From positions 186,001 through 250,000 of the IMG/VR virus record IMGVR_UViG_3300035212_003113: a stretch of 64,000 nucleotides of DNA; one strand, 5' to 3'. Of the stretch, positions 30,247 to 52,614 are shown one piece after another. The translations under genes were made by a program, and so were the position numbers. The notes below the pieces were generated by a model that was not told the origin of the DNA, did no database searches, and saw nothing but the letters and a program-made list of their open reading frames with translations. The number at the start of each line of letters is the position of its first letter. Positions within the stretch are counted from its first letter, which is position 1.

Positions 30247-30279
30247 AAGTCCGGCTTAAAATGCCGGATTTATGTTTTT
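30247..30279 (+). terminator. Hairpin/possible terminator before terL
   Basis: AAGTCCGGC-ttaaaat-GCCGGATTT followed by a T-rich tract. Confidence 0.5.
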
Positions 30280-30290
30280 GTGGAGCAAGC

Positions 30291-32150
30291 ATGGTAAGCC
30301 CTAAGAAAATAAAAGCTTTAACACCGAAAGACATTTTTGATGAAATCAAGAAAGATATCTCAAAAATAGATCCAGTTAGCTTTGCAGAAAATCATTTGAC
30401 AATAGACGGAAAGCCATTCGACTTATCGGGCTCGGGCTGGAAGTACATGGCGGAAATCTATCGGATGATATCTGCTCAGGTAGAGAATAAAGAGGCGCGC
30501 CCAATTGTTCTACTGAAGGGACGTCAGGTCGGTGCAACCATCATGGCAGGGGTGCTCAGCCTACACATGGGTAGCTCTGGCCTATATGGTATTGAATCCG
30601 GCAAACCCCCGATCCGAGTCATGCATGTTTTTCCTGATCTGAAGCGCTGCGGCGTGTATGCAAAGGATATTCTTGCAAGTCTAATTAGCGGTGCTAAAGA
30701 GAATTATATCTCAAGGCGTGCGCTTAAGGTTGCAAAGGTCGTAGATCTGGAGGACACGCAGACCCAGAAGAATTTTGTCGGCATGAACAAGATTCGTATC
30801 GACTCCATAGGGAAGTCAGGCGACCGTATTCGCGGTAGCACGCAGGATGTTTTGCTTTATGATGAAATCCAAGACATGGGGCGCACTGCCATAGAGAATA
30901 CTCTCAAGGTTCTAACTGCAACCCCATACGGTGCTCCTACTAAGGGGGTACAGGTATTCTTTGGAACGCCTAAGCATGCAGGCTCATACTTCTGGTCTCT
31001 CTGGGAAGACTCTGATCAGCGATTTTATCAACTGCGCTGCAAGCATTGCGACCACCATTTCTTTCTCTATAATCTTGAAAATGATGACTGGAACGAGACT
31101 TGGGTAAAAGAGCAACTAGTAAAGTGTCCTTCCTGCCTAAAGACTCAGGACAAGAGAGAGGCAGTAGACCTGGGAAGGTGGGTCGCAACTAAGCCGTTTA
31201 ATGCAAAGGGCGAGCCGCAGAAATTCGTAGGATATCATTTTAACATGATGCTTAGCCCTCTCTTCACAAAAGAGAATGTGCTTGAGTACTGGCCGCAGCA
31301 TAATAAAAATGCATCCGAGCGGGCATGGAGAAACGAGACCAAGGGGCAATTTTACTCTGCTAGCGAAGTACCGCTTACCTTGGAAGAGGTTTATGCAAAT
31401 GCTCTCGACGAGAGTCGCGGCGTTGCAAAAAGTATATCCTCTCCAGCCGGCAAGAGTTACTTCCTTGGGATGGACTGGGGTGAGAAGGTTGAATCTGATT
31501 CAGACCTAGAGGCGAAACGCGGCAAATCTTTCACCTGTGCTGTCATACTATCAGTGGATCACACAGGCGTTCTCACTATAGAGAATGCGGTTCGCCTAAA
31601 AAAGAATGACCCGGATTACAAGATGAATGTTGTCCGCAAACTAATGTCTGATTTTCACATAGATCAGGCGGCAGCAGACTTTTATTACGGCAACGACTTT
31701 GTTCGACTGGTTCAGCATAACGAGGGCCTAAAGGATAAATTCTTGGGCTGCACAAATCTCAGTAACTCTAAGCGAGCTTTCTCTTATGATGAGAAAGACC
31801 TAATGGTAGGCGTGAACAAGGACCAGGTCCTTGATGAGATATTTGCTCTATTTAAGAGAGGGCGTATAAAAATACCGGCCAAAGGCGACTCACTAGAGCT
31901 ACTGAGTTGGCTAGTTGATCATATTACGTCCATGGAAACACACACCAAGACAAAAGACGGCATTGTGCTAAAAACATATAAAAAGGGCGTAATACAGAAC
32001 GACGGATTAATGGCACTAATGTACGCATATACAGCGTACAAATTCATGGTAACTCGCAAATTCAGCGAATTTGCAGTCGAGGGTGTAAATAAAAAACGCC
32101 AAGAAGAGGTAGTTGTTCCAGTTGTGGGCTACATTCCGCGCATGCACTGA
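30291..32150 (+). CDS. terL: Terminase large subunit (lambda gpA-like)
   Basis: Walker A KGRQVGAT, Walker B LLYDEIQD, motif III FGTP, CxxC...CxxC, nuclease GMDWG and NDGLMA; SD GGAG before ATG 30291. Confidence 0.9.
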   Translation: MVSPKKIKALTPKDIFDEIKKDISKIDPVSFAENHLTIDGKPFDLSGSGWKYMAEIYRMISAQVENKEARPIVLLKGRQVGATIMAGVLSLHMGSSGLYGIESGKPPIRVMHVFPDLKRCGVYAKDILASLISGAKENYISRRALKVAKVVDLEDTQTQKNFVGMNKIRIDSIGKSGDRIRGSTQDVLLYDEIQDMGRTAIENTLKVLTATPYGAPTKGVQVFFGTPKHAGSYFWSLWEDSDQRFYQLRCKHCDHHFFLYNLENDDWNETWVKEQLVKCPSCLKTQDKREAVDLGRWVATKPFNAKGEPQKFVGYHFNMMLSPLFTKENVLEYWPQHNKNASERAWRNETKGQFYSASEVPLTLEEVYANALDESRGVAKSISSPAGKSYFLGMDWGEKVESDSDLEAKRGKSFTCAVILSVDHTGVLTIENAVRLKKNDPDYKMNVVRKLMSDFHIDQAAADFYYGNDFVRLVQHNEGLKDKFLGCTNLSNSKRAFSYDEKDLMVGVNKDQVLDEIFALFKRGRIKIPAKGDSLELLSWLVDHITSMETHTKTKDGIVLKTYKKGVIQNDGLMALMYAYTAYKFMVTRKFSEFAVEGVNKKRQEEVVVPVVGYIPRMH

Positions 32151-32158
32151 GGTAGGAT

Positions 32159-34000
32159 ATGACAGATAATCACAATAAATGGGGCACAGTAGATTGGCAG
32201 ACTCCACCAGAGCCGCTCGCCTTGGCGTCCCGCCCTGATGGCAAGACGCCGTATCGCCCACCTGCGTATTCTAATGTCTCCGTTCCTGAGCGCACGCGGG
32301 ACTTTGCCATTAGCGAGGCATCCCTGCGCTCATTAGGCCCGGAGCGCCGTGCTCAAGTAGAGGATGAGATGCTGCGCAAGACAGCGGTAGCTGGCGATCC
32401 TCGCGTACAGTTAGGCAATGCAGTTGCAGCTGGCAAGCAAAGCCTTATCAAGACTGCTGCTGCTTCAGAACTAGGCGGACAGCTGCATATCGCTGGTCGT
32501 GGCAATACCACGAACATGATGCCTAATCTGTATTCGCCTCTGTTTCTGACTGCCAACCTACAGCTGCCGCGTGATCGCATAACCGCTAATGCGTGGAATC
32601 GCGCATTCTACGAGACAAATCCTCTTGTACGTAATGCAATCAACCTTCATGCTACTTATCCGATTAGCAAGCTAGTTATCAAGTGCAAGGATAAGAAAAT
32701 CGAGCGCAAGTACTTGGACATGGCGAAGCGCGTTGATCTTTTCAACGTAGTTCAGCAGGTAGCCCTCGAGTACTGGATGATTGGCGAAGTATTTCCATAT
32801 GCGGAGTACGACGAAGACCGCAACATGTGGTCGAAGATATACTGCCACAATCCAGACTACGTTGTAGTAAAGCGTACCCCGATTCCAGGTGAATCGATTA
32901 TTGCTCTTAAGCCAGACCCCAAGCTGCTGCAAATAGTTCAGTCAAATGACCCGGTCCATCGCGCGTATCGCGAGAAAATGGATCCGTCGCTGCTAGATGC
33001 AATTGCTCGCAACGAGTACATTCCACTCGATGGCTTTAATATTAGCCACATCAAGAACGAGTCGACAGCATACAATACCCACGGATCCTCTGTTATAGTT
33101 TCTGTCTGGAAAGATCTCGTGCTGTGGGACCTTTTCCGCGAGAATAAGTTTATTCAGGCAGATGCCATGGTAAATCCCATGACACTGGTAAAGGTAGGCG
33201 CCTCGAATGCAGATGGTCACTATCCGCGACAGGAAGAGCTGTCGGCTATGCGTGATGTGTTCGAGCATGCGCAGTACGATAAGGATTTTAAGATATTTAC
33301 GCACCCAGATGTTGCAATAGAGAGAATCGGCTACAACGGCGGTATCCTCGACATATCTGGAGACTTGAATTTTATACTTGATAATATATTCATTGGCCTT
33401 ATGGTCCCGAAGGCAGTGATTACGCAGGAGGGTGCGTCCTACGCCTCGGCGTCAGTCGCTCTCGACGTCATTCGTCAGCGATATAATAACTTCCGCACGA
33501 AGATGACAAACTGGCTTGTGAATAAGATCTTTGCGCCCATGGCAGAGGCCAATGACTTTTATGAGACCATTGATGGCCAGAAGCATCTGGTCCTGCCCGA
33601 GATAGAGTGGAATCAGATGACGCTCTATGACGTCGATACGTACATAGGTCATCTCCTGAATTTGCTTGACAAGACTCCGCCTACTGCGCCGGTAGGCGTA
33701 AGTCGCACAACCGTGTACCGCAGTCTTGGGCTAGATTTCCAGGACGAGCTAGCGAATCAGAGGAAAGAGGCAATTCAGATGGCAATTGTTGCCAAAGAGA
33801 TGGCTGCGATTGCAGGCATGTCCTTGTCCGAGCTCCGTACGCTTGATCCCGATCAGCCGATCATAGAAAAAGAGGATGCGCTGCTGCCCGGAGTTGCTCC
33901 AGAGGGTGCCCCTCCAGGCGGAGACATGGGGATGCCTCCTTCGGGACCTGATGCCGGTCCACCGCCTGGTGGCGCCGAGCTACCTATGCCGCCGATGTGA
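32159..34000 (+). CDS. Portal protein
   Basis: Follows terL; FYETNPLVRNAINLH, EYWMIGEVFPY, NPDYV, helical C-half, Pro/Gly tail. Confidence 0.8.
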   Translation: MTDNHNKWGTVDWQTPPEPLALASRPDGKTPYRPPAYSNVSVPERTRDFAISEASLRSLGPERRAQVEDEMLRKTAVAGDPRVQLGNAVAAGKQSLIKTAAASELGGQLHIAGRGNTTNMMPNLYSPLFLTANLQLPRDRITANAWNRAFYETNPLVRNAINLHATYPISKLVIKCKDKKIERKYLDMAKRVDLFNVVQQVALEYWMIGEVFPYAEYDEDRNMWSKIYCHNPDYVVVKRTPIPGESIIALKPDPKLLQIVQSNDPVHRAYREKMDPSLLDAIARNEYIPLDGFNISHIKNESTAYNTHGSSVIVSVWKDLVLWDLFRENKFIQADAMVNPMTLVKVGASNADGHYPRQEELSAMRDVFEHAQYDKDFKIFTHPDVAIERIGYNGGILDISGDLNFILDNIFIGLMVPKAVITQEGASYASASVALDVIRQRYNNFRTKMTNWLVNKIFAPMAEANDFYETIDGQKHLVLPEIEWNQMTLYDVDTYIGHLLNLLDKTPPTAPVGVSRTTVYRSLGLDFQDELANQRKEAIQMAIVAKEMAAIAGMSLSELRTLDPDQPIIEKEDALLPGVAPEGAPPGGDMGMPPSGPDAGPPPGGAELPMPPM

Positions 34001-37187: not shown

Positions 37188-37748
37188 ATGTCTAGTATTA
37201 CCAAGAAATCTGCAGTGGAGTTTTCCGTTCCAGTCTCAGATGGCGAAAAAGAGCGCGCTGTCGCACTGAAGGATCGCATACATGATTTTTGCGATAGAAT
37301 AAAGAAGTTCAAGGATTTTTTCGATGCCTTTTTTACTTCTCTTGAGCAGATCAGCTCAGGCAAAGACCTAATTCCAATTGGCGCCACACTAAAGCGCTAT
37401 CAGTATAAGCTGCGCTCTCACTTTAATAACTGCGTCAAGACCCTTTCCCTGGTACTGGTTTCATATAGGAGTCTTTATTCTGAGTCACGTACGGATCAGA
37501 TAAGGGACGTAATGATGAATACTTTTTCTGAGGCACGGCTCAAGTTCATAGAGCTGATGAGTCTGATGGATGATTTTGACTCAGATAATTTTATAGCAGG
37601 GGCCAAGGAAAACTATCAACAGATCAATAATTATATGGAAAAGGTATTGGCCAGCTGCCAAGAAGAGTGGATTTCGCATATAGATAAGAATATTCTGGGT
37701 AAATTGAAGCTAGCTTCGAGTTTTTCGCTTGTAAGGACTACCAAATGA
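37188..37748 (+). CDS. Hypothetical helical protein
   Basis: SD GGAG; ITKKSA. Confidence 0.7.
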   Translation: MSSITKKSAVEFSVPVSDGEKERAVALKDRIHDFCDRIKKFKDFFDAFFTSLEQISSGKDLIPIGATLKRYQYKLRSHFNNCVKTLSLVLVSYRSLYSESRTDQIRDVMMNTFSEARLKFIELMSLMDDFDSDNFIAGAKENYQQINNYMEKVLASCQEEWISHIDKNILGKLKLASSFSLVRTTK

Positions 37749-37885
37749 TAATTAAATACGGGACATCCGAGGCCGCCGAAGTAATCGATGCGAAGAATAT
37801 TCCTTCGTGGGTGACTCGCGATCCGCCGAAATCCGAGCAGGATGGCGTGACGGAGTCTGACGATAATACAGAGGAAAAAGAATGA
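37745..37885 (+). CDS. 46-aa micro-protein absent from the ORF track
   Basis: MIIKYGTSEAAEVIDAKNIPSWVTRDPPKSEQDGVTESDDNTEEKE; ATGA overlaps at both ends, SD AAGGA. Confidence 0.65.
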   Translation: MIIKYGTSEAAEVIDAKNIPSWVTRDPPKSEQDGVTESDDNTEEKE

Positions 37886-40800
37886 GTATTGTCAAGCATG
37901 CCTTTATCGATGGCGTTTCTATTGGAATACTAGATAACAACAAACTCAATGATGATCCGGGCGTACAAGCCCGGTTTGCGGCCGTCACGAACAAGCTTCG
38001 TGACGAGCAAAAGAAGCGCGGCAGCAAGGAGCTCTCTCCTTATGTGGATGACTTCCTTTATGCCAGCTGCATTATGATGCATGCTGCAGAGGCAGCACTT
38101 GTCAATCAGGAGACGGGTGAACCGATCAAGACTGCGGCCGGCAAGTCGGCTGCAGGTTGGTTCGAGAAATACGATATCGATGGCGGCAAAGAGACTGCTC
38201 GCTGGGTATCGCCAGATGGCATTCGCCCAGTAAAGAATAACAATGGAGATATCTTCCCAGAATCCGAGCTACTAAAGGCCTATAAGAACTGGGTCGGCAA
38301 GCCGCTCTGCAAAGATCATGTGTCTAGCTCCGTAGACGGCATCCGCGGCGTAATCGTAGATACGTATTATGATCCAAAGTTTAAGCGTGTTCACGCGCTA
38401 TTTGCACTTGATAAGAAGAACTATCCCGATCTCGCCCGCAAGGTAGAGGCCGGCTATGCCACCAATGTCTCTATGGGCACGGCGGTTGGTCGCTCTATCT
38501 GCAGCGAGTGCCAGAACGTTGCAACCGTAGCATCTGAATTCTGCTCGCACGTCAAGTCGCGTACGCATTACGGCGAGATCAACTTTGATCTAAATCCAAT
38601 TGAGCTGAGCATCGTTGTCACCGGTGCAGATCCGCGTGCGAAGATTCGCAAGATTGTTGCAAGCCTAGACGAGTACCGTGCCCAGGCAGAGGAGCTGCGC
38701 AAGGTAAAAGGCGCTCCGCTAGAGGAGCTTGATCAGATTTCTGCAAACATCAAGGCTGCCGCAGCAGTTGCGGAAGAGATCGACGTAAAGCCGGTACTGT
38801 CCGACATAATCAGTATAATGGAGACATCAGAGCCTGGCAGTGGCGCCTTTGGTGATGCAACAGATAAGCTTGTCGCTCTGCTCTCGGAAGAGGGTAATGC
38901 TGAAGCCGTTTACTCTAACATCAAAGATGATCGCCCTCTGGTCGATTCGTTGCTAAATGCTCTACGAAGAGCTAAGGCACAGGATCTGGTGGAAAAGCTG
39001 AATTCTCTAAGGATTCAGAATGTGTCAGTGCCATCGATGCAGTCAACGGATACGACCAAGACGGTTGGCAGTGTAGATGGCGCGCTATCTAATTTGAATA
39101 CTAGCATAAAACCCAGCTCAACGCTGGGAGATATAGAGCTAGAGAACCAGGTAAGTGCGTTTGCTCCAGGTACCCGTGACATGTCCGGTCTGCAGCAATT
39201 TGCAGCATTATATACAGATGGCGTAGCCACAAAAGACGGGCAGCTGCTTGAAAAAGCAGCTAATGATCTGGCAGGCAGAATAACATCTATTAAAAACAGT
39301 TTGGATAGTTTGAAATCGTGTCTCCCGACCCAGAAGGCGGGAGTGGGAACAGGAGATATTATGACGTTTGATGAACTACGGAAGCGTGCTAACCTGCGGA
39401 AGAAGGCTTACATGCAGGGAACTGAGGAACCAAAGTCTTACCCCGCCATGGGAAATCCGGATCTACGTGATGGCGACCATCACCTACACGGTGAAGAGCT
39501 CGACACCTCCGTAGCTAATCCAGACCAGAAGACGAAGGAAATGCTGCTTCGCGCGTCGCTTAACGAGCGCCGTACTGCCCGCGCAGAGAAGCTGAAGGCC
39601 ATTGCTGAAATGGCTGTTGTCGTCAAGGACCAGTCAGGCAATCCAGCCGGCGCAATTGTCAACAAGAAGTTCGTTCCAAAGGCAATGGCTGATGATGGCC
39701 ACGACGCCGATGACGCCGATCACGCTGAAGACGGCGATCACGCCGCTGATGCCGAGCTCAAGAAGGCAGAGGCCGCTCTCGTTCAGCGCCTTGAGATGCT
39801 GAAGGAAGCCGCTAAGAAGAAGGCCAAAAAGCCAGTTAAGGAAGAAGAAGAGGATAAGCCTGCCAAGGGCGGCAAGGATGCCAAGAAGGCTAAGCCAACC
39901 AAGGGCGACGACAAGATGGACAAGATGAAGAAGAAGGCTTATCCACAGGGCACTGCTGAGCCAGAGTCATACAAGCCAATGGGCGATCCAGACCTCCGCG
40001 ACGGCGATCATCACCTGGGTGGCAAGGAGCTCGACACCAAGGCAGGCAATCCTGATCAGAAGGTCAAGGAGCTAATTCAGCGCGCCGGCCTAAAGGCTCG
40101 TCTCACCAAGTCGGCCAACGTTGCAAACTCACGTTGGGCAGTCCTCGCAGGCGACAAGGAAGTGTTCTCGGTCACCGCCGGCGATGCGTACAATGTTCAC
40201 CTTAATAAGCAGAGCGATGTTGCTGGCAAGACCTGGGGCGATCTGTTCGTTTCGCCAGCCTATGGCAAGCAGCTTATGGCGCAGATTCGCGCTGGCAAGA
40301 TTAGCAAGTTGGCAGAAGAGCTTGATGCTGCGAAGCAGTCAGTTGATGCTCCGGCCGCTGATGCAGCTCCAGCCCCCGCCGCTGCACCAGCTCCGGCCCC
40401 AATGGTAGATGTCGTTCCAGAAGCCAAGGGCGATGACGACATGAAGGACAAGCTCATGGCCGCTCTCGAGAAGCTCGAGGAGTGCATGCAGAATCTAAAA
40501 GACATTGTCATGGGCTCCGATAAGGGCGTAGACAACGTTGATGTAGATACCATGGCCGCTACGGCTTCACTCGACCGTGGCATGTTCGAGGCTCACGCAG
40601 AGCTGGCTTCGCTGGCTAGCGAGCTCAGCTTCCTCGCCAAGGAAGCAAATCTGAGCGTTCCGTCGGTACGCCTTGCTGCTCGCGCGGCAATCCGTGACGG
40701 TCACCTCGCTGCAATCGAGGCTAACGAGCGCATCGCTGAGTACGCCGATGCCTGCGACGGCGGCATGTATGTTCTCGATGAGGAGGAGCTAGAAGAGGTC

Positions 40801-41691
40801 GCCGAGGAAGTCGAGGAGGCTATTGAAGAGCACGATGAGGAGGAGCACGGCGATCTAGACAAGGCCCTAGAGGACCTCCGCAAGGAGCTTGCCGAGCTCG
40901 AGGACAAGGTTGATGAGCTCGAGGAAGAGGTCGAGGAAGGCGAAGAGGACGAGGAGAAGGAGTCGGACGCTATGGACGACAAACTCGCCGCCCGCGCCGC
41001 AATGCGCCAGCAGCTCGTTGCTCGCGCCGCGAAGGCTGATATGGTCACCGCAGATCCGATGTTGAATATTCACGGCAAGGGCGAGGGCAAGCTCGACCTC
41101 GGCATGAATATCTCGGATGATGGCGATGTCGTTGAGAGCGTATTCGAGGTACAGCAGAAGGTCATGAATACTCTTGGCGAGAAAGTCAAGAAGGCCGCTG
41201 CCGGTATCGCTGAGGCCGTCCGCAAGGGCGTCCTGAAGGATTCGCAGCTCGATGTACTCGTTGCTACCGCTGCAGTCGATGCAGAGGCCGTTAAGTACTA
41301 CCGCGATTACTTCGCCGGCGCCGATGCCGACTTCGCCAAGGGCCTTGTTGCAGAGTTCAAGAAGTCTGCTTCCGCCACAGAGGACGTTGGCTTCCGTTAC
41401 AAGCGCGCATACGCAGTAGCAATCGATGCACAGGCTCGCAACCTAATTGGCACCGGCCGCGCCGCTCTTGATGAGTGCGCCGACACGCTGGCCAACGGCA
41501 GCGACGCGAACTTCGATAGCTTCAAGCGCATGGTTGGCAGTGTCAAGACCTCTGTCCGTACGGCCGGTGTCGTACCCCAGATGGGCGTCGTTGATGGCGG
41601 CGAAGCCACGAATACGCGCACGGCCTCGGACAATGGTTCCGTTGATGTACGCGATTGGCGCAGCCTAGGCAAAGCGCTGTTCGATATCTGA
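37882..41691 (+). CDS. Prohead maturation protease fused to scaffold/core protein
   Basis: NNNGDIF, GKPLCKDH (His), VSMG (Ser), CxxC...CxH, ELSIV..GAD as in HK97/assemblin-fold proteases; long charged coiled-coil C-terminus. Confidence 0.8.
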   Translation: MSIVKHAFIDGVSIGILDNNKLNDDPGVQARFAAVTNKLRDEQKKRGSKELSPYVDDFLYASCIMMHAAEAALVNQETGEPIKTAAGKSAAGWFEKYDIDGGKETARWVSPDGIRPVKNNNGDIFPESELLKAYKNWVGKPLCKDHVSSSVDGIRGVIVDTYYDPKFKRVHALFALDKKNYPDLARKVEAGYATNVSMGTAVGRSICSECQNVATVASEFCSHVKSRTHYGEINFDLNPIELSIVVTGADPRAKIRKIVASLDEYRAQAEELRKVKGAPLEELDQISANIKAAAAVAEEIDVKPVLSDIISIMETSEPGSGAFGDATDKLVALLSEEGNAEAVYSNIKDDRPLVDSLLNALRRAKAQDLVEKLNSLRIQNVSVPSMQSTDTTKTVGSVDGALSNLNTSIKPSSTLGDIELENQVSAFAPGTRDMSGLQQFAALYTDGVATKDGQLLEKAANDLAGRITSIKNSLDSLKSCLPTQKAGVGTGDIMTFDELRKRANLRKKAYMQGTEEPKSYPAMGNPDLRDGDHHLHGEELDTSVANPDQKTKEMLLRASLNERRTARAEKLKAIAEMAVVVKDQSGNPAGAIVNKKFVPKAMADDGHDADDADHAEDGDHAADAELKKAEAALVQRLEMLKEAAKKKAKKPVKEEEEDKPAKGGKDAKKAKPTKGDDKMDKMKKKAYPQGTAEPESYKPMGDPDLRDGDHHLGGKELDTKAGNPDQKVKELIQRAGLKARLTKSANVANSRWAVLAGDKEVFSVTAGDAYNVHLNKQSDVAGKTWGDLFVSPAYGKQLMAQIRAGKISKLAEELDAAKQSVDAPAADAAPAPAAAPAPAPMVDVVPEAKGDDDMKDKLMAALEKLEECMQNLKDIVMGSDKGVDNVDVDTMAATASLDRGMFEAHAELASLASELSFLAKEANLSVPSVRLAARAAIRDGHLAAIEANERIAEYADACDGGMYVLDEEELEEVAEEVEEAIEEHDEEEHGDLDKALEDLRKELAELEDKVDELEEEVEEGEEDEEKESDAMDDKLAARAAMRQQLVARAAKADMVTADPMLNIHGKGEGKLDLGMNISDDGDVVESVFEVQQKVMNTLGEKVKKAAAGIAEAVRKGVLKDSQLDVLVATAAVDAEAVKYYRDYFAGADADFAKGLVAEFKKSASATEDVGFRYKRAYAVAIDAQARNLIGTGRAALDECADTLANGSDANFDSFKRMVGSVKTSVRTAGVVPQMGVVDGGEATNTRTASDNGSVDVRDWRSLGKALFDI
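39361..41691 (+). CDS. Predicted nested in-frame scaffold protein (776 aa) from internal ATG
   Basis: AGGAG at 39351-39355, CTATTAA at 39287, apparent codon-usage shift downstream. Confidence 0.6.
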   Translation: MTFDELRKRANLRKKAYMQGTEEPKSYPAMGNPDLRDGDHHLHGEELDTSVANPDQKTKEMLLRASLNERRTARAEKLKAIAEMAVVVKDQSGNPAGAIVNKKFVPKAMADDGHDADDADHAEDGDHAADAELKKAEAALVQRLEMLKEAAKKKAKKPVKEEEEDKPAKGGKDAKKAKPTKGDDKMDKMKKKAYPQGTAEPESYKPMGDPDLRDGDHHLGGKELDTKAGNPDQKVKELIQRAGLKARLTKSANVANSRWAVLAGDKEVFSVTAGDAYNVHLNKQSDVAGKTWGDLFVSPAYGKQLMAQIRAGKISKLAEELDAAKQSVDAPAADAAPAPAAAPAPAPMVDVVPEAKGDDDMKDKLMAALEKLEECMQNLKDIVMGSDKGVDNVDVDTMAATASLDRGMFEAHAELASLASELSFLAKEANLSVPSVRLAARAAIRDGHLAAIEANERIAEYADACDGGMYVLDEEELEEVAEEVEEAIEEHDEEEHGDLDKALEDLRKELAELEDKVDELEEEVEEGEEDEEKESDAMDDKLAARAAMRQQLVARAAKADMVTADPMLNIHGKGEGKLDLGMNISDDGDVVESVFEVQQKVMNTLGEKVKKAAAGIAEAVRKGVLKDSQLDVLVATAAVDAEAVKYYRDYFAGADADFAKGLVAEFKKSASATEDVGFRYKRAYAVAIDAQARNLIGTGRAALDECADTLANGSDANFDSFKRMVGSVKTSVRTAGVVPQMGVVDGGEATNTRTASDNGSVDVRDWRSLGKALFDI
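39394..40092 (+). repeat. Two copies of a 56-aa repeat (39394-39561, 39925-40092)
   Basis: KKAY.QGT.EP.SY..MG.PDLRDGDHHL.G.ELDT...NPDQK.KE...RA.L, 38/56 identical by hand. Confidence 0.9.
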
Positions 41692-41714
41692 GTAAAATAG
41701 TACTCAGATAAACG

Positions 41715-41744
41715 AGTCCCCGCTCCGGCGGGGACTTCTTTTTT
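41715..41744 (+). terminator. Intrinsic terminator
   Basis: AGTCCCCGC-tccg-GCGGGGACT-TCTTTTTT. Confidence 0.9.
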
Positions 41745-41841
41745 ATAAATCGCGCCGGCAGATCAATAAATGTAAATATTTTTGTCCGTCTAGCGGACCG
41801 TAATTTATTGAAAAGGAACATATAAGCCAGGTGAGGCATTT

Positions 41842-41985
41842 ATGTTTGACTTAGACCGGCTTGAGATGCAGTCAGAAATGCAAGAGCTGAAAGAGTTGGG
41901 CCTAGATCCGGAGGAAATACGAGGATATATATGTTTTTTCTGGGTAGATTCTGAAGAAAGTGAGGTAGGAAATGTCATCAATTGA
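41842..41985 (+). CDS. 47-aa acidic micro-protein absent from the ORF track
   Basis: MFDLDRLEMQSEMQELKELGLDPEEIRGYICFFWVDSEESEVGNVIN; SD GAGG. Confidence 0.55.
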   Translation: MFDLDRLEMQSEMQELKELGLDPEEIRGYICFFWVDSEESEVGNVIN

Positions 41986-42178
41986 TATCGCAGATGAGAT
42001 CGCAAAGGGAATGCAGGATGCCTTGACAGAGAATGCTCCCAAGATCGAAGGGCACTTTTCAGGCGTTGCTAACCAGCTGGCCAATACTGCCAATGCGTTA
42101 GATGCTGCCGGTAGCCCGTTGGCTGCACGAGTAGACTCGCTGCTTGGTCAGATGGTCAGTGTACTAGGAGAGGACTGA
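41972..42178 (+). CDS. Small protein consisting largely of the shared helical module
   Basis: LANTANALDAAGSPLAARVDSLL; SD GAGG/AGGA. Confidence 0.7.
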   Translation: MSSIDIADEIAKGMQDALTENAPKIEGHFSGVANQLANTANALDAAGSPLAARVDSLLGQMVSVLGED

Positions 42179-47236: not shown

Positions 47237-49045
47237 ATGTCTATCGCTGACAATATAGAAAAAGAATTTGCCAGACTGCTTCGCGAGTCCAGATCTGTTG
47301 CGCGCCATAAGCTAGTTGCCCAGGCCGCCGACAAGGAAGACGCCATAAGAGCCAAGCGCCCTCGCAAAGAGAAGAACAAGAAGAGCGTCATCGAAGAAGC
47401 TCATCCGGGCGAAGTGTTTGTTGCCGAGTCTGACGGGCTTGGTGGCCTAGCCGGAAACCCAGAGCAGGTACAACAGCAGATACTCGACGCACTGAATCGC
47501 CGTCCTTCTGCTTTTCCATATCAGGGCCTTGTGGCAAATGCCATGGCTGACTTTGAGAAGACCGCAGAAGTGCTCGAATCACACAATCTATTTAGCGAGG
47601 CCGCAGCAATCCGCAAGGTTGCCGCGGAGTGGCTATCGGTGTTAGAAAGGCGAGGGGGCTTAAAAAAAAAGGCATCAGATGGGGTTCCGGATCAAGTGAT
47701 CTCTCCTAGCGGAGAGGTGATAGAAGATTTTATCAATGTCCCTAGTGCTCGTCCAAATGCGCCCGGATCGGCAAAGACGCCTCCTTCTGCTTCTCCTCCC
47801 CCATCCGGAGCGTTCATCCCTGATGCAGAAGAGGTCCGCGGCGGTGCGGCAGCAGCTTCAGCCGAAGGGAAGGCGGCTACTCGTGTTGTTGGTCCAGTAC
47901 CAGTAGATCCATCTGCGGCCGTGGCAGATGCAAAAAAAGCTGCAGATGCTACACAGCCTCTTGCCGATGCTGGAAAAGCTGCCGCAAAGGCAAAAGGCTT
48001 CTTCTCAAAGGCACTGAAATATCTTGGCGTGGCTGGCGATGCGGCCATGATCGGCTCGTATGCCCTTGACAAGGATTGGACATCTGTAATAGGTACTGTT
48101 GGCGCGGGCGGTGTGGCCGCAGCTGCTGCCGCATTGAGTGCACCGTTGGCCGCAGCTGCAGGAGGAGTAACAGCAGCAGCAGGAATAGGCATAGGCATAT
48201 ACAGCTTGATCAATGAGACTATTCTCGGAGCTTGGCAAGAGGATCTAGAAACGGACATAAATGATGCCATTGGGGCTGTCCAGTCAGTTCTAGATGATAA
48301 TGACACGGATACTGCCCAGAGGTCTGCAGCCCAGACCATGATGAATGAGCTGCAAGCTATTGTCAAAAATATATCCGTTTTGCGCCAGGAGGCTAAGAAA
48401 GGTGAGCGGGCAAACATGAACGCAGTGGCCCAAGGGATGTCTGATATCGAAGATTCTGTGCGCGCGGCTCGCATAGCGGCAGATGATCTAAAAGGTGCGA
48501 CCGTATTTGATCTTGGGGTGCGAAAAGTCATCGCCACTCTTGATGATATAGAAGAGTCTAATCAGGAGTTCAACGAAGAACTGCAGAGCAAGGTAGATCC
48601 ATCAATGTCCAAACTTACGGATGCCATTAAGCAGATTTCTGCTGCGGCAGCAGCGAGAAAGGGCATAATAGGAGAGCTTAATATAAATGTGGGCGGCTCT
48701 TCGCCAGGCTCCTCATCATCCTCTTCGTCTCAAGGCTCTCCAGCTGTCTCCACGGATGATCCTGCTCATATCAAAGAAGTGCAGGCTGCAATAAACGACC
48801 TGCAGGCCGCAGACGCAGGATTCAGCCCAAGGCTTGCTCTAACTGGAAAGTGGGATCCGCCGACAGAAAAGGCGCTTGAGTCCTACGTTCAGCTTTGGTT
48901 AGAAGTCGACCCAGGTCTTGTCCAGGTTATAAGTGTTGAAAGCCTTAAGGACGCTGAGGGCAGCGTTATACGCGCCATGAATCGCGACTATCGCAATAAA
49001 GAGGAAGTAATCGCCTCTATCATGAGAGCTTCGACTAATAAATAG
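47237..49045 (+). CDS. Putative ejection/internal protein with hydrophobic hairpin and C-terminal PG-binding-like domain
   Basis: AHP motif, helical module, LKKKAS, long Ala/Gly hydrophobic stretch, IKEVQAAIN...LTGKWDPPTEKAL. Confidence 0.6.
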   Translation: MSIADNIEKEFARLLRESRSVARHKLVAQAADKEDAIRAKRPRKEKNKKSVIEEAHPGEVFVAESDGLGGLAGNPEQVQQQILDALNRRPSAFPYQGLVANAMADFEKTAEVLESHNLFSEAAAIRKVAAEWLSVLERRGGLKKKASDGVPDQVISPSGEVIEDFINVPSARPNAPGSAKTPPSASPPPSGAFIPDAEEVRGGAAAASAEGKAATRVVGPVPVDPSAAVADAKKAADATQPLADAGKAAAKAKGFFSKALKYLGVAGDAAMIGSYALDKDWTSVIGTVGAGGVAAAAAALSAPLAAAAGGVTAAAGIGIGIYSLINETILGAWQEDLETDINDAIGAVQSVLDDNDTDTAQRSAAQTMMNELQAIVKNISVLRQEAKKGERANMNAVAQGMSDIEDSVRAARIAADDLKGATVFDLGVRKVIATLDDIEESNQEFNEELQSKVDPSMSKLTDAIKQISAAAAARKGIIGELNINVGGSSPGSSSSSSSQGSPAVSTDDPAHIKEVQAAINDLQAADAGFSPRLALTGKWDPPTEKALESYVQLWLEVDPGLVQVISVESLKDAEGSVIRAMNRDYRNKEEVIASIMRASTNK

Positions 49046-49116: not shown

Positions 49117-49767
49117 ATGGCTCTATATCCTGTTCAGCCCGGCATCCAACCACTAGGTCTTTTCGACGTTCTCGACACCGAGCTCGCCACCATCAAGGGC
49201 GGCGAGGTTATGACCCTCGGTTCAGCTGCTACCACCAACTCAGGCACGGAGACCGCTGCTCCCGACGTTCTCGACGGCTACACCTTCGAGGCGACCGCCA
49301 GCCGTCCAGTTGCTCAGAAGGCTTCGCTCGCAGCGAACGCTTTCGTTGCTCTCGCCGATGAGGGCACTGGTCCCGACTACTTCACCATGCTCGGCACGGT
49401 AGTAGGCGGCAAGACCGGTCTCGTTGTCAGCGGCGGCGCCGTCCTCGGCCCACACACCTCGACCGCTTCGGGCAAGGTCACCCTATGGGACAAGCCCGGT
49501 CTCTACGAGGTTACCCTCGATGCAGTAGCTTCGGACTTCGCCAGCACGGCTCTCGTTCCTGGTAAAGTTCTCGGCTTCACCGCCGCGGGCTTGCTGCAGC
49601 GTAACGGCGGCGTCGGCGCTCTCGCCGACAGCGGCTGCGCAGTATTCGTCGAGTTCTCGCAGTCGTCCAGCCTCGTCACCACGCCAGCTCGTCTGGTCGG
49701 CGGTGCGAATGCTCCTGACCGCGTCAAGATCATGTTCCTCGGCGCTGCTGGCAAGGCTCTGACCTGA
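49117..49767 (+). CDS. Abundant capsid decoration/cement-like protein
   Basis: Codon bias similar to the MCP, own promoter motif and terminator, SGKVTLW; position near MCP. Confidence 0.6.
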   Translation: MALYPVQPGIQPLGLFDVLDTELATIKGGEVMTLGSAATTNSGTETAAPDVLDGYTFEATASRPVAQKASLAANAFVALADEGTGPDYFTMLGTVVGGKTGLVVSGGAVLGPHTSTASGKVTLWDKPGLYEVTLDAVASDFASTALVPGKVLGFTAAGLLQRNGGVGALADSGCAVFVEFSQSSSLVTTPARLVGGANAPDRVKIMFLGAAGKALT

Positions 49768-49907: not shown

Positions 49908-51917
49908 ATGCCATATGTTTGTGATGTTCGTAGAGATAACAAGTTAACGGTCATAGAGGTAGATGGGCGTCTGTATATCGAAAGTCAAGAGTACACCCCA
50001 ACAAATCTTGCTCCAATTGCTTTTTCACAGGGCCCTACTACGTGGCCCCCCGCTGCATCGAGTGCCTCTGGTAGATTTCCTGCTCAACAGCTATCCCTTT
50101 CACGAGTATATTCTCGCGGCTACACCGGTCTTTACCCATTTACTGATACAGATGGCGAGGCCTATGACACAACTCGTACGATGTGCGGACTGAGCGTACT
50201 TGGTCCAGTTGTCTATTCTTCGGCTTACGAGAGGTTCTATTGCTGGGGCAATAGCTCGTCTGCAAACAACGCCGTATCGTCATTTGACGATTCATTTAGA
50301 ATGGTTTCTGGTAGCCTTGGGACAATAGGTGGCACTTATTCTGTTTATGGCTTCTTTTTGCCTTCACAGAATAACAGATGGTTTGCCATAGCGCCTCATG
50401 GGCCAGGAATCGGAGCTGATGGAACTAGCGCTCTGACTGCAGCCACGGTAGGGTCTTTGCTGGAAAGCGGCGTAGTGTCTACCAATTCAGCATCGAGCTG
50501 GTGGCATCAGCTACATGTTCCCTACCTCGGTACCGATTGGCTGGTATCAGTTCTATCTCCTTGGCAGAATGGATTTAGTTCCGTGGTAGCATATAACGAC
50601 GTTAGAATTGCTTATTATAATCGCAATACAGGGGCTGGTACTGACCTCGGTATATGGCTGGACGTTGCCACTACGTTTCTGCCGAGTGCCGGGCTGTCCG
50701 CATTCTCAACGCTCGGGTGCTCTCCCAGTAATCACATAAGGACGAGCACTGATGAAGTTTATTTCTATTTCCCTATTCTTAGTAGTACCAATGAGACAAC
50801 AACTGGTCTTCCTGGCTTTAAGGTAGCCATCGGCACGATCAGCGGGTTAAATTCCACCCCTACTCGTACGCCGATCAGTACTGCCTATACAATAAGTGCA
50901 GTCGATACCGTAGCCAATACCATTACGACAAGTGCGGATGCTCCGAACTTTTCAGTTGTGCGCTTTACTGCAACAGGAGTAGGAGCGGCTGTTCCGCCGC
51001 CACTTGAGACTGGGCGCGACTACTGGACGATCAGACAGTCGGCCAATATAAGCAAGATCGCAACGACCTATCAAAATGCGGTCGATGGCTACTCTGTAGA
51101 TCTTACTGGTGCTGGCGCCGGAACTCGCGTGGCCACTGCATTTGAATTCCTGACGCTAGATGTCAATTCGATTTCATCAGGTGGAGCTGCAGTCACAAAC
51201 AGGAACGCAATTCCAGGCACTATTACTCGTATGTGGGTATTCGAGGATGCCGGCATCAAATACCTATGCATGGGCGTCTCTGAAGGCGGCACCCGAGCGA
51301 CGCTTAACTCCAGCGTCATGAATCTTTATTTGTGGCGTCTAGATAGCAAGCGCCAGGCAACATTCCTGCAGAAGGTCACGGCAGGCAGCGCTGGTCGCGT
51401 AAGAAGCTTCTTTACGCTTGATGAGGCGCAGAAGCGGATAGCCATGATTTACGATGATCGCATAATGTTCTACCAGTGGAACCCATCTACAAACTGGACC
51501 TTTCAGTCAACACAGGATGTGCAGGTGCAGGACGTAGGTGTGGATACGCTTGGTCGCACATGGGTAACAAACCGCGGAACATATGCTGGTCCAATGGCAG
51601 GTATTCCGGCTAACCAGCAGCAACTGTATGTGTTTGAGCCATCTGGCGCTGCGGCAAACATAGTGGTTTCATTTGCGCAGAATGCTTATACGTACAGCGG
51701 GACCCCTGTTGCCTCAAATATAATCGTAAATGCCTATGACACAACTGGCGCCCGCGTCGCACTTGGCGTAACGCTTACTCGCGACTCTACGAATTTCTCA
51801 TTTACTGCCGACGCACCGTCAGCATCAGTAGTTACGAGTACTTCGGCCGATACTCTTGTGCCGATCTCTATATTCTCTACCGGATTGCTTTCCGTACTTG
51901 CTGTGCCAGGAACATGA
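49908..51917 (+). CDS. Beta-rich putative virion surface/receptor-binding protein
   Basis: Ser/Thr/aromatic-rich; VRFT...PPPLETGRDYW...KIATT...VDLTGAG module typical of phage fibres. Confidence 0.6.
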   Translation: MPYVCDVRRDNKLTVIEVDGRLYIESQEYTPTNLAPIAFSQGPTTWPPAASSASGRFPAQQLSLSRVYSRGYTGLYPFTDTDGEAYDTTRTMCGLSVLGPVVYSSAYERFYCWGNSSSANNAVSSFDDSFRMVSGSLGTIGGTYSVYGFFLPSQNNRWFAIAPHGPGIGADGTSALTAATVGSLLESGVVSTNSASSWWHQLHVPYLGTDWLVSVLSPWQNGFSSVVAYNDVRIAYYNRNTGAGTDLGIWLDVATTFLPSAGLSAFSTLGCSPSNHIRTSTDEVYFYFPILSSTNETTTGLPGFKVAIGTISGLNSTPTRTPISTAYTISAVDTVANTITTSADAPNFSVVRFTATGVGAAVPPPLETGRDYWTIRQSANISKIATTYQNAVDGYSVDLTGAGAGTRVATAFEFLTLDVNSISSGGAAVTNRNAIPGTITRMWVFEDAGIKYLCMGVSEGGTRATLNSSVMNLYLWRLDSKRQATFLQKVTAGSAGRVRSFFTLDEAQKRIAMIYDDRIMFYQWNPSTNWTFQSTQDVQVQDVGVDTLGRTWVTNRGTYAGPMAGIPANQQQLYVFEPSGAAANIVVSFAQNAYTYSGTPVASNIIVNAYDTTGARVALGVTLTRDSTNFSFTADAPSASVVTSTSADTLVPISIFSTGLLSVLAVPGT

Positions 51918-52452: not shown

Positions 52453-52458
52453 TAGAGG

Positions 52459-52484: not shown

Positions 52485-52614
52485 GGCTATCAATTTGGAT
52501 AGCACTGTTTAAGCATGCCTATTAATTCTGTAGGTAATTTTCGTAATTAATTTTGGTGACTCTTGTCCCCAAAGTGCAAGTAAGAGTAAGTAAAGTTCAC
52601 TTCGGAGAAAAACA

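What the first reader, a model, noticed from the sequence alone, without database searches (positions are those of the whole stretch)
39287..41691. Scaffold gene nested in the protease gene with its own promoter, hairpin and RBS
Seen: inside the 1269-aa ORF, CTATTAA (39287), a CTCCCG/CGGGAG hairpin (about 39322-39343) and AGGAG (39351) precede in-frame Met494 (39361). The ~300 nt before it are AT-rich with unbiased codons, and downstream codons switch to the MCP-like bias. Established: lambda C/Nu3 and herpesvirus UL26/UL26.5 use nested scaffolds, the latter with its own transcript. Inference: a herpes-like arrangement producing little protease-scaffold and much 776-aa scaffold.
Basis: partly seen in the sequence, partly recalled or inferred. 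Interest (0 to 1): 0.7.

Follow-up and report, generated by a model that had tools for sequence, protein, structure and literature searches.

The report
Scaffold gene nested in protease gene
A giant lake-water phage carries one long gene for a capsid-maturation protease fused to a probable scaffolding protein, with a second conserved in-frame start inside it that should yield the scaffold part alone and in larger amounts; this arrangement is already known from phages lambda and Mu and from herpesviruses.

Summary
ORF 37882-41691 (1269 aa) contains CTATTAA (39287), a 6-bp hairpin (39322-39343), AGGAG (39351) and in-frame Met494 (39361).

- **Protease.** The N-terminal 290 aa model as a herpesvirus-assemblin/T4 gp21-fold prohead protease (Z about 10).
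- **Fusion.** All 72 complete IMG/VR homologues are single ORFs of 1119-1406 aa.
- **Internal start.** All 72 keep the internal ATG. 97% have a Shine-Dalgarno core, against 12% of other in-frame ATGs. The linker upstream is hypervariable.
- **Ultraconserved island.** In seven relatives at about 70% protein identity, nt 39277-39377 are identical except at one site. Third codon positions are invariant at 97% there and 17-20% elsewhere.
- **Promoter motif.** CTAT(T/C)AA is enriched and strand-specific in intergenic regions. It is conserved behind terminators upstream of the capsid gene in relatives.
- **Codon bias.** MCP-referenced bias is 0.45 in the protease part, 0.27 in the linker and 0.60 in the nested part. 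The genome's 95th percentile is 0.45.
- **Terminator.** A strong terminator follows the stop codon.

The conserved internal translation start is well supported. The internal promoter is plausible but seen only in this clade. The scaffold role is inferred. No RNA data were listed. I file it as a new member of a known kind.

The parts
37746..37883 (+). 45-aa upstream ORF whose stop overlaps the protease start codon (ATGA). This suggests translational coupling of the full-length protease-scaffold ORF to upstream genes.
   Evidence: Sequence read. Similar small ORFs lie directly upstream in distant relatives L057, L067, L073 and L077.
37882..41691 (+). Full-length ORF of 1269 aa (about 137 kDa): a protease-linker-scaffold fusion.
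   Evidence: All 72 complete IMG/VR homologues are single ORFs of 1119-1406 aa. The same DNA, with no differences, occurs in contigs of four lake or river runs.
38035..38676 (+). Core of the prohead protease domain (residues about 52-265). His146 and Ser197 are invariant, as are Cys143, Cys207, Cys210 and Cys221.
   Evidence: PHROG head maturation protease, E 7e-14. Phage G gp19 is 42% identical. AF2 model has pLDDT 75. VIA-align gives Z 10.5 to VZV protease and 10.1 to T4 gp21. Invariant residues.
38752..39276 (+). Hypervariable, AT-richer linker (residues 291 to about 465) with weak codon bias. Its reading frame stays open in every relative.
   Evidence: Amino-acid conservation is 0-10% among relatives at about 70% identity. 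The internal Met sits anywhere from residue 339 to 529 across the family. GC3 is 0.44 and CAI 0.27.
39277..39377 (+). Ultraconserved 101-nt island covering the putative promoter, leader, ribosome-binding site, start codon and first 5 codons.
   Evidence: Invariant runs of 41 and 59 nt in 7 relatives; the next longest run in the gene is 13 nt. 97% of third codon positions are invariant here, against 17-20% elsewhere.
39287..39293 (+). CTATTAA, a putative phage (late) promoter element 74 nt upstream of the internal ATG.
   Evidence: 11 copies in oriented upstream intergenic regions against 1.85 expected (maximum 6 in 300 simulations); reverse complement only 2. Conserved upstream of the MCP gene in relatives down to 66% MCP identity, and interchangeable with CTATCAA at orthologous sites. 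L008 has CTATCAA at this internal site.
39322..39343 (+). Hairpin CTCCCG-N10-CGGGAG in the putative leader.
   Evidence: It forms in the minimum-free-energy fold, but z is only -0.2 to -1.4 against shuffles. L008 keeps the stems with an unrelated loop. It was not seen in distant clades.
39351..39355 (+). Shine-Dalgarno sequence AGGAG, 5 nt before the internal ATG.
   Evidence: Anti-SD duplex -7.4 kcal/mol. An SD core is present in 97% of 72 homologous sites, against 12% of 2,481 other in-frame ATGs.
39361..41691 (+). Nested in-frame gene of 776 aa (83.6 kDa, pI 4.8, net charge -47, 16% Ala). It is the putative scaffolding or core protein.
   Evidence: The Met is conserved in 72 of 72 homologues. 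The AF2 model is mostly long helices and disorder. CAI of 0.60 is above the genome's 95th percentile. Composition.
39403..39567 (+). Repeat 1 (residues 508-562) of a conserved module of about 55 aa, containing KKAY.QGTEEP and NPDQK.KE.
   Evidence: Seen in the translation. Its key residues are invariant or nearly so across the family.
39931..40095 (+). Repeat 2 (residues 684-738) of the same module.
41377..41538 (+). Conserved C-terminal helical segment (nested residues 673-726) that resembles phage G gp21.
   Evidence: hhalign probability 89.5%, E 2e-6, against phage G gp21. That is a separate 486-aa gene two genes downstream of the stand-alone protease gp19. pLDDT is 81-94 here.
41714..41747 (+). 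Intrinsic terminator (10-bp GC-rich stem followed by a T-run) 23 nt after the stop codon. It would end both the long and the nested transcript.
52519..52525 (+). Reference copy of CTATTAA, 96 nt upstream of the MCP gene (52615-53619). A CTATCAA copy and a terminator precede it.

Best explanation
One 3.8-kb reading frame makes two proteins that share a C-terminus.

**Long product.** Translation from 37882 gives a fusion of about 137 kDa. It consists of an assemblin/T4 gp21-fold prohead protease, a hypervariable linker, and a 776-aa acidic, mostly helical protein. This start is probably coupled to a small upstream ORF on a long late transcript.

**Short product.** A second initiation site at Met494 (AGGAG, 5 nt, ATG at 39361) gives the 776-aa protein alone. 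I take this protein to be the scaffolding or core protein of the procapsid.

**Transcription in this clade.** The internal start most likely has its own transcript. It would begin just downstream of a CTATTAA promoter element at 39287 and end at the same terminator (41714-41747) as the long mRNA. That would give much scaffold and little protease-scaffold.

**Role of the fusion.** The shared C-terminal part would carry the protease into the procapsid along with the scaffold, as in phage Mu I/Z, lambda C/Nu3 and herpesvirus UL26/UL26.5.

**Shown here:** the sequence elements, their conservation, the fold of the protease domain and the step in codon bias.

**Inferred:** use of the start codon, promoter activity, the ratio of the two products and the scaffolding function.
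For: 1. **The fusion is under selection.** 72 of 72 complete homologues keep one ORF of 1119-1406 aa across a linker with almost no sequence conservation. A profile search found 621 clusters at 50% identity, most of 1100-1600 aa.
2. **The internal start is conserved.** The Met494 equivalent is the only conserved Met outside the protease domain: 70 of 72 as aligned, and 72 of 72 after a one-residue shift in two sequences. All 72 sites pair with the anti-SD at -4 kcal/mol or better. 97% have an SD core, against 12% of 2,481 other in-frame ATGs and 74% of the ORFs' own leftmost starts. The encoded peptide upstream differs between clades (GTGDI, NKEIP, SKEENN, KQEEN and others) while GGAG or GAGG is retained.
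3. **Constraint acts on the nucleotides.** Positions 39277-39377 are identical in 7 relatives except at one site. 97% of third codon positions are invariant, against 17-20% elsewhere.
4. **CTAT(T/C)AA behaves like a promoter motif.** It occurs 11 times in oriented intergenic regions against 1.85 expected, with only 2 reverse complements. It is conserved upstream of the MCP gene behind terminators, amid flanks that are not conserved. T and C alternate at orthologous sites. The leader of 74 nt falls within the 22-141 nt seen at other sites. A 262-aa ORF with sub-threshold sigma-factor matches is present, and no phage RNA polymerase was found.
5. **Codon bias.** The nested part scores 0.60, the protease part 0.45 and the linker 0.27. 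The nested part exceeds the protease part in 9 of 10 genomes with an MCP reference.
6. **Terminator** directly after the stop codon.
7. **Protease fold.** Z 10.5 and 10.1 to VZV protease and T4 gp21.
8. **Modularity.** In phage G the protease is a 300-aa stand-alone gene, and a segment of the nested protein matches the separate downstream gene gp21. One metagenomic homologue, P0060, has in-frame stops upstream of its start.
9. **Precedent.** In-frame scaffold starts inside protease genes are described for Mu and Mu-like phages (PMC4378225) and for lambda C/Nu3 (Shaw and Murialdo 1980, cited in PMC8508860). Separate, roughly 10-fold more abundant scaffold transcripts are described for herpesviruses (PMC11565193).
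Against: - There are no transcript, ribosome-profiling or proteomic data. None of the listed sequencing runs was RNA.
- Outside the near clade, only 5 of about 60 loci have CTAT(T/C)AA within 150 nt upstream of the internal ATG, against about 1 expected. The promoter is therefore not a family feature, and the motif has never been tested.
- The hairpin is not statistically unusual.
- The nested protein matches no known scaffold family in Pfam, PHROGs, PDB sequences, BFVD folds or the ESM Atlas.
- 84 kDa is large for a scaffolding protein.
- The match to phage G gp21 covers only 56 residues, and gp21 itself has no assigned function.
- The sequences compared are related to each other, so counts such as 72 of 72 are not independent events.
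Confidence: 0.62

Rival explanations
1. The nested scaffold is made by internal translation initiation only, as in lambda C/Nu3 or Mu I/Z. There is a single long late mRNA. The conserved 60 nt upstream of the ribosome-binding site, including CTATTAA and the hairpin, then serves another purpose. It could be an RNA structure or standby site that keeps the internal ribosome-binding site open inside a translated ORF, a binding site for a regulator, or an RNA processing site.
For: The SD and ATG are universal (72 of 72), whereas CTAT(T/C)AA is found upstream in only the near clade plus 5 of about 60 other loci. In the L018-L033 clade, conservation upstream is largely confined to the ribosome-binding site. 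The phage precedents use internal translation starts (PMC4378225).
Against: The heptamer at 39287 is exactly the one conserved behind terminators upstream of the MCP gene and another late gene. L008 carries the same T-to-C variant that is tolerated at those sites. The island begins only 10 nt upstream of the heptamer. The size of the codon-bias step suggests a large difference in expression.
Confidence: 0.22
2. The nested product exists but is not a scaffolding protein. It could be an abundant internal head, ejection or inner-body type protein, or a polyprotein precursor of several such proteins. It would enter the procapsid with the protease and be cleaved there.
For: Giant phages pack many protease-processed internal proteins (PMC10052503, PMC7552025). 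The protein is unusually long, at 776 aa. It carries two conserved repeats of about 55 aa and a small confidently modelled beta/alpha domain (nested residues 241-330), which suggests several modules. It has no homology to any annotated scaffold.
Against: In every characterised case, the protein fused in frame behind a prohead protease is the scaffold (lambda, Mu, P2, herpesviruses). The protein is acidic, Ala-rich, largely helical or disordered and fast-evolving, at 67-78% identity where the MCP is 99% identical. That profile is typical of scaffolds. Among the ORFs translated between the portal and MCP genes (47237-49045, 49117-49767, 49908-51917), none looks like a classical helical scaffold. 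The others gave no scaffold hit in Pfam or PHROGs.
Confidence: 0.2
3. No separate product is made. The whole 1269-aa polyprotein is the only translation product, and the protease releases the C-terminal part by cleavage. The conserved Met and SD-like sequence would then be a relic of an ancient gene fusion, a translational pause site or part of a protein motif.
For: From this genome alone, an AGGAG-ATG inside a Glu-rich ORF is not rare: 3 occur in this ORF, and 0.9% of internal ATGs have one. P2 gpO shows that a fusion alone can be enough (my own knowledge).
Against: A relic would not survive in 72 of 72 lineages down to 25% identity beside a hypervariable linker, with SD cores re-encoded through different peptides. 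This reading does not explain the step in codon bias in 9 of 10 genomes. A 1:1 ratio of protease to scaffold would be unlike any known system.
Confidence: 0.05

Closest known systems
Phage Mu gene I/Z and Mu-like phages (protease with an in-frame internal start for the scaffold); phage lambda C/Nu3
   Same: The protease is N-terminal. The scaffold is the C-terminal part of the same frame and is also made alone from an internal start codon preceded by a Shine-Dalgarno sequence 5-9 nt upstream. The gene lies between the portal and MCP genes (PMC4378225; Shaw and Murialdo 1980, cited in PMC8508860).
   Different: Here the ORF is three to four times longer: 1269 aa in all, with a 776-aa nested product and a hypervariable linker of about 200 aa. 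The phage is a 372-kb jumbo phage. An internal promoter-like element with a 100-nt ultraconserved island precedes the start, whereas in lambda and Mu, as far as I know, both products come from the one late mRNA. No sequence similarity to these genes was detected beyond the protease fold. The lambda C protease belongs to a different fold family (my own knowledge).
Herpesvirus UL26/UL26.5 (assemblin-scaffold fusion with a separately transcribed nested scaffold gene), including OsHV-1
   Same: The protease domain has the assemblin fold (Z 8-10.5 to VZV, PRV, HSV, HCMV, KSHV and EBV proteases). It is fused in frame to the scaffold. A promoter-like element lies inside the ORF. The two transcripts are expected to share a 3' end. 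Codon bias implies an excess of the short product; in herpesviruses the scaffold transcript is about 10-fold more abundant (PMC11565193).
   Different: This is a bacterial system using a Shine-Dalgarno sequence and a bacterial-type terminator. Promoter activity is inferred, not measured. The release (R) and maturation (M) cleavage sites were not identified. There is no sequence similarity in the scaffold part.
Bacillus phage G gp19 (protease) and gp21
   Same: This is the closest named relative of the protease domain: 42% identity over residues 119-261. The gene order portal, protease, MCP is the same. A conserved C-terminal segment of the nested protein matches gp21 (hhalign probability 89.5%).
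   Different: In phage G the protease is a stand-alone 300-aa gene and gp21 is a separate 486-aa gene. Here the two are fused and nested.
Bxz1-like mycobacteriophage gp94 (for example Catera; PHROG 2774)
   Same: It has a homologous protease domain at the N-terminus of a protein of about 1370 aa. Its strongest internal SD-ATG is at residue 593.
   Different: The C-terminal parts show no detectable similarity (hhalign probability 2%). Whether its internal site is conserved was not tested.

Membership tests
Prohead (capsid maturation) serine protease of the assemblin / T4 gp21 / HK97 gp4 fold | Sequence similarity to annotated prohead proteases | tested here: met
   PHROG 18299 'head maturation protease', E 6.9e-14. 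tblastn matches phage G gp19 (E 1e-23) and annotated proteases of Rhodococcus E3, Gordonia phages and BcepSaruman. No Pfam family reached its threshold.
Prohead (capsid maturation) serine protease of the assemblin / T4 gp21 / HK97 gp4 fold | Assemblin-like fold | tested here: met
   AF2 model with pLDDT 75 and pTM 0.67. VIA-align: Z 10.5 to VZV protease (rmsd 2.8 A, 115 aligned residues), Z 10.1 to T4 gp21, and Z 8-10 to six other herpesvirus proteases. Unrelated MCE-domain hits score 6.9 or less. Foldseek probability 0.99 for T4 gp21, but E is only 3e-3.
Prohead (capsid maturation) serine protease of the assemblin / T4 gp21 / HK97 gp4 fold | Catalytic His and Ser conserved | tested here: inconclusive
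   His146 (in the DH motif) and Ser197 (in VSMG) are invariant in 59 and 25 sequences and lie 51 residues apart. Their superposition on the catalytic residues of gp21 or assemblin was not checked residue by residue. The third catalytic residue was not identified.
Nested protease-scaffold gene (lambda C/Nu3, Mu I/Z type) | In-frame internal start codon with a ribosome-binding site inside the protease ORF | tested here: met
   AGGAG, 5 nt, ATG at 39361. The ATG is conserved in 72 of 72 homologues. The SD core is present at 97% of these sites, against 12% of control ATGs. Nucleotide-level constraint across the site.
Nested protease-scaffold gene (lambda C/Nu3, Mu I/Z type) | Two proteins with a common C-terminus are actually made | not testable with these tools
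   No RNA, ribosome-profiling or proteome data exist for this uncultured phage. The step in codon bias is indirect support only.
Nested protease-scaffold gene (lambda C/Nu3, Mu I/Z type) | The C-terminal product acts as the scaffolding protein | not testable with these tools
   Its composition, predicted helices and disorder, gene position and fast evolution all fit. There is no homology to any annotated scaffold.
Herpesvirus UL26/UL26.5-type transcription unit | Separate promoter inside the protease ORF driving a 3'-coterminal scaffold transcript | tested here: inconclusive
   For: CTATTAA is identical to the conserved heptamer upstream of the MCP gene. The ultraconserved island reaches -84. 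The terminator at 41714 would be shared by both transcripts. Against: the motif is missing in most distant relatives and there are no transcript data.
Herpesvirus UL26/UL26.5-type transcription unit | Release and maturation cleavage sites flanking the linker and the C-terminal tail | not tested
   No cleavage motif is known for this protease clade. The two conserved repeats of about 55 aa and the conserved C-terminal tail are candidate sites only.

The most novel reading that the evidence does not exclude
A large, previously undescribed family of jumbo phages (at least 600 clusters at 50% identity) expresses its scaffold as herpesviruses do. A dedicated promoter inside the assemblin-fold protease gene would drive an abundant, 3'-coterminal scaffold mRNA. 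The promoter, leader and ribosome-binding site would be written into a 100-nt stretch that also codes for protein and is frozen at every nucleotide. If so, the nested protease-scaffold expression strategy, including its transcriptional layer, would be shared between tailed phages and herpesviruses. The finding would also define a new minimal phage promoter, CTAT(T/C)AA, possibly read by a phage-encoded sigma-like factor.
Probability: 0.5. Interest if true: 0.62.

Novelty: new member of a known kind. Interest (0 to 1): 0.5.

Why it matters
- **Annotation.** Thousands of metagenomic giant-phage genomes carry this ORF of about 1,200 aa labelled 'hypothetical' or simply 'prohead protease'. Here it resolves into a protease, a linker and a nested gene for the probable scaffold. 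How giant capsids are scaffolded is poorly understood, so this is a useful candidate.
- **Evolution.** The work extends the protease-scaffold nesting known from lambda, Mu and herpesviruses to an assemblin-fold protease in jumbo phages. It therefore bears on how old this expression strategy is within Duplodnaviria.
- **A testable regulatory element.** The 100-nt ultraconserved island is a clear case of regulatory signals embedded in coding sequence. It also gives a testable candidate promoter motif, CTAT(T/C)AA, for an uncultured phage clade.
- **Limits.** The principle is already established, and the expression claims remain computational.

Tried and rejected
- **RNA evidence.** Two run searches listed only DNA metagenomes from lakes, rivers, sediments and estuaries, and no RNA run. 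Laying four DNA runs confirmed the sequence and the continuity of the ORF but says nothing about expression.
- **Complex prediction.** A job pairing the MCP with the C-terminal 187 aa of the nested protein returned no verdict (score 0.00). It is not evidence either way.
- **Identity of the nested protein.** There were no significant hits in Pfam or PHROGs for 10 family members. The PDB sequence profile gave only coiled-coil noise, with E 1.5e-3 or worse. BFVD Foldseek gave TM below 0.1 and the ESM Atlas feature scores were about 0.8.
- **Possible homologues.** hhalign against BcepSaruman gp084, the 568-aa gene after its stand-alone protease, found nothing. The same was true for phage G gp20 and the C-terminal part of Catera gp94.
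- **Hairpin as a significant structure.** Rejected on energy, with z -0.2 to -1.4, and +1.0 for L008.
- **GGATAG as a second promoter element.** It is enriched in intergenic regions (17 copies against 4.4 expected), but its contexts are mixed and partly SD-like.
- **CTATTAA as a family-wide internal promoter.** Rejected, because it occurs in only 5 of about 60 distant loci.
- **Other internal AGGAG-ATG sites (Met869, Met1031).** These Met residues are not conserved.
- **Short representatives as stand-alone scaffold genes.** Three of the four with DNA are fused genes cut by a contig end. Only P0060 has in-frame stops upstream.
- **Phage RNA polymerases.** No multisubunit or T7-type RNA polymerase was found, but the T7-type search lacked a working positive control.

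Full report
**Setting**

The window is bases 186001-250000 of a 371,675-bp phage genome whose ends overlap by 127 bp, so the assembly is circular and complete. IMG/VR records it as having direct terminal repeats and as 100% complete. The same DNA is found in lake-water and riverine metagenomes. No phage in GenBank resembles it at the DNA level.

The head-gene module reads as follows:
- large terminase, 30261-32150;
- portal, 32159-34000;
- four unassigned genes;
- the 1269-aa ORF, 37882-41691;
- about ten further genes;
- major capsid protein (MCP), 52615-53619.

**Check of the observation**

They are CTATTAA at 39287, CTCCCG/CGGGAG at 39322-39343, AGGAG at 39351 and in-frame Met494 at 39361.

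The composition claim holds as well:

| Part of the ORF | GC3 | MCP-referenced CAI |
|---|---|---|
| Protease, residues 1-290 | 0.56 | 0.45 |
| Linker, residues 291-493 | 0.44 | 0.27 |
| Nested part, residues 494-1269 | 0.65 | 0.60 |

The 95th percentile of CAI among 242 genes of this genome is 0.446. Apart from the MCP itself, which is the reference, only two other genes reach the value of the nested part.

Taken from this genome alone, the signals are modest:
- 0.9% of internal in-frame ATGs carry AGGAG at the right distance, and this Glu-rich ORF has three such sites.
- CTATTAA is not over-represented genome-wide.
- The hairpin region folds no better than shuffled sequence.

The case therefore rests on comparison with relatives.

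**The protease part**

- PHROGs places residues 117-228 in a head-maturation-protease family.
- The best named relative is the 300-aa stand-alone protease gp19 of Bacillus phage G.
- An AF2 model of residues 1-300 (pLDDT 75) aligns with varicella-zoster virus protease at Z 10.5 and with T4 gp21 at Z 10.1. It aligns with six other herpesvirus assemblins at Z 8-10. Unrelated hits score 6.9 or below.
- His146 and Ser197 are invariant, as are four cysteines.

**A large family of fused genes**

A word-indexed search found about 50 proteins of 840-1396 aa. IMG/VR gave 79 loci, and all 72 complete genes are single ORFs of 1119-1406 aa. A profile of the nested part found 621 clusters at 50% identity, mostly of 1100-1600 aa.

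The frame therefore stays open across a linker that is almost unalignable. Among relatives at about 70% identity, 0-10% of its columns are conserved. The linker also varies in length, so the internal Met lies anywhere from residue 339 to 529.

Four of the shorter hits that begin at the internal Met had DNA available. Three are fused genes cut off by a contig end. One, P0060, has in-frame stops and AT-rich DNA upstream and may be a true stand-alone copy.

**The internal start**

In the 72-sequence alignment, Met494 is the only conserved Met outside the protease domain. It is conserved in 70 of 72 as aligned, and the other two are offset by one residue.

At the DNA level, all 72 sites have an ATG preceded by a Shine-Dalgarno element. 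The anti-SD duplex is -4 kcal/mol or better in 100% of them, and an SD core is present in 97%. For comparison, 12% of 2,481 other in-frame ATGs in the same genes have an SD core, and 74% of the ORFs' own leftmost starts do.

The peptide encoded over the SD differs between clades while GGAG or GAGG stays. That pattern is expected if the nucleotides, not the amino acids, are under selection. Directly after the Met the conserved protein begins, with K-K-A-Y-F-Q-G.

**Nucleotide-level constraint**

Seven relatives are 68-95% identical to each other in protein, and their synonymous sites are saturated elsewhere. In these, nt 39277-39377 are identical except at one position (39318). The two invariant runs are 41 and 59 nt long, and the next longest run in the 3.8-kb gene is 13 nt. 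Third codon positions are invariant at 97% in the island and at 17-20% in the protease and the rest of the nested gene.

The island starts abruptly 10 nt before CTATTAA, after the hypervariable linker, and ends 16 nt after the ATG. A ribosome-binding site alone would explain roughly -20 to +16. The extra 60 nt upstream need another function.

L008, at 48% identity, keeps four of the elements:
- CTATCAA;
- both hairpin stems, with an unrelated loop;
- AGGAG;
- the ATG.

**Is CTATTAA a promoter?**

Evidence in favour:
- In gene-oriented intergenic DNA of this genome it occurs 11 times, against 1.85 expected from a first-order Markov model (maximum 6 in 300 simulations). Its reverse complement occurs twice.
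- The sites lie 22-141 nt before start codons, several directly behind terminators. One lies 96 nt before the MCP gene.
- Upstream of the MCP gene the heptamer is kept in relatives down to 66% MCP identity, although its flanks are not. It is often tandem with a CTATCAA copy.
- At the orthologous site before the 669-aa gene, L081 has CTATCAA where the window has CTATTAA.
- The genome has a 262-aa ORF with sub-threshold sigma region 2 and region 4 matches. No multisubunit RNA polymerase was found.
- A strong terminator at 41714-41747 follows the ORF, so a nested transcript would share its 3' end with the long one.

Evidence against a general role:
- Only 5 of about 60 distant loci have the motif within 150 nt upstream of the internal ATG, against about 1 expected.
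- Their MCP upstream regions show no common motif that I could recognise.

I conclude that internal translation initiation is the family-wide mechanism. The internal promoter is a well-motivated hypothesis for the window's clade.

**The nested protein**

It is 776 aa and 83.6 kDa, with pI 4.8, net charge -47, 16% Ala and 20% Asp plus Glu. The AF2 model (pLDDT 63) shows:
- long helices and helical hairpins separated by disorder;
- one small confidently modelled beta/alpha domain (nested residues 241-330);
- a helical C-terminal domain, followed by a short terminal helix.

Two repeats of about 55 aa (residues 508-562 and 684-738) are conserved across the family.

No database names the protein. 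One conserved C-terminal segment matches phage G gp21, a separate gene just downstream of that phage's protease (probability 89.5%, E 2e-6).

The protein evolves much faster than the MCP: 67-78% identity where the MCP is 99-100% identical in the same relatives.

The MCP-like codon bias of the nested part exceeds that of the protease part in 9 of 10 genomes where an MCP reference was available, including five distant ones.

Three neighbouring ORFs were translated:
- 47237-49045 is Ala-rich with membrane-like hydrophobic segments;
- 49117-49767 is beta-rich;
- 49908-51917 is beta-rich.

Together these points make 'scaffolding or core protein' the best reading. An abundant internal head protein or polyprotein cannot be excluded.

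**Comparison with known systems**

In-frame scaffold starts inside protease genes are established for Mu and predicted for Mu-like phages, with an SD 8-9 nt upstream (PMC4378225). The same overlap was found in lambda C/Nu3 (Shaw and Murialdo 1980, cited in PMC8508860).

Herpesviruses, including the mollusc virus OsHV-1, transcribe the nested scaffold separately, at about 10-fold the level of the fusion. The accepted rationale is that the fusion brings a little protease into the procapsid (PMC11565193).

The present gene works in the same way as far as sequence can show. It combines the assemblin fold with a probable internal promoter, which brings it nearer to the herpesvirus arrangement than lambda or Mu are. 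It differs in four ways: its size, the hypervariable linker, the repeats, and its occurrence in a large clade of uncultured jumbo phages.

**Verdict**

- The nested start has about 0.85 support.
- Its own promoter in this clade has about 0.55-0.6.
- The scaffold function has about 0.65.
- The hairpin is real but unremarkable.
- This is a new member of a known kind of gene arrangement. It has one feature, the internal promoter written into an ultraconserved coding island, that would be new for phages if confirmed.

Noticed in passing
window 37746-37883 (+): A 45-aa ORF ends in ATGA, overlapping the protease start codon. Small ORFs beginning M.FIKHGDGKI sit at the same place in distant relatives. 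Their N-terminus resembles that of the protease ORF itself (F.K.G...I).
   Followed up: partly
whole genome G000, oriented intergenic regions: The motif CGCCCGATCCTG is the most enriched oriented intergenic word. GATCCTG occurs 17 times against 1.3 expected, with 7 reverse complements. It could be a second promoter class or a regulatory repeat.
   Followed up: no
window 52455-52614 and loci L081-L089: The MCP gene has a conserved leader of about 95 nt behind tandem CTATCAA/CTATTAA copies and a terminator. The MCP protein is 99-100% identical in relatives whose protease-scaffold ORF is only 67-78% identical.
   Followed up: partly
L129 (Mycobacterium phage Catera) 3839-7948: gp94 of Bxz1-like mycobacteriophages is 1369 aa with the homologous protease domain at its N-terminus. 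Its strongest internal SD-ATG is at residue 593 and reads MTFE, like MTFD here. The same nesting may exist there, but conservation was not tested.
   Followed up: partly
G000:C1:177957-178745 (about 7.3 kb upstream of the window; L128:1351-2139): A 262-aa ORF has sub-threshold matches to sigma-70 region 2 (19.9-22.2 bits, cut-off 24) and to a region 4-like helix-turn-helix. It is a candidate phage sigma factor for the CTATTAA sites.
   Followed up: partly
L132 (JGI 3300022532 contig, 2.8 kb) 93-2693: P0060 is a full-length homologue of the nested protein alone, with in-frame stop codons and AT-rich DNA upstream. It may be a stand-alone scaffold gene, but the contig is too short to show the neighbouring genes.
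   Followed up: partly
window 38308-38544 (residues 143-221 of the ORF): Four invariant cysteines (Cys143, Cys207, Cys210, Cys221) lie around the catalytic His and Ser. This suggests a metal-binding insertion in the protease domain.
   Followed up: no
window 49117-49767 (+): A 216-aa beta-rich protein has the second-highest MCP-like codon bias in the genome (CAI 0.71, GC3 0.70) and no family hit. It is probably an abundant capsid decoration or other structural protein.
   Followed up: partly
representative proteins P0057, P0063, P0077, P0083 and others: A subclade has versions of 1490-1665 aa in which the nested part starts at about residue 711-807. These carry some 350 extra residues between the N-terminus and the scaffold part.
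   Followed up: no
window 41842-42177 (+): The 487-nt gap after the terminator has low GC. It contains two short ORFs starting at 41842 and 41973; the second ends with a TGATG overlap onto the next gene at 42178.
   Followed up: no
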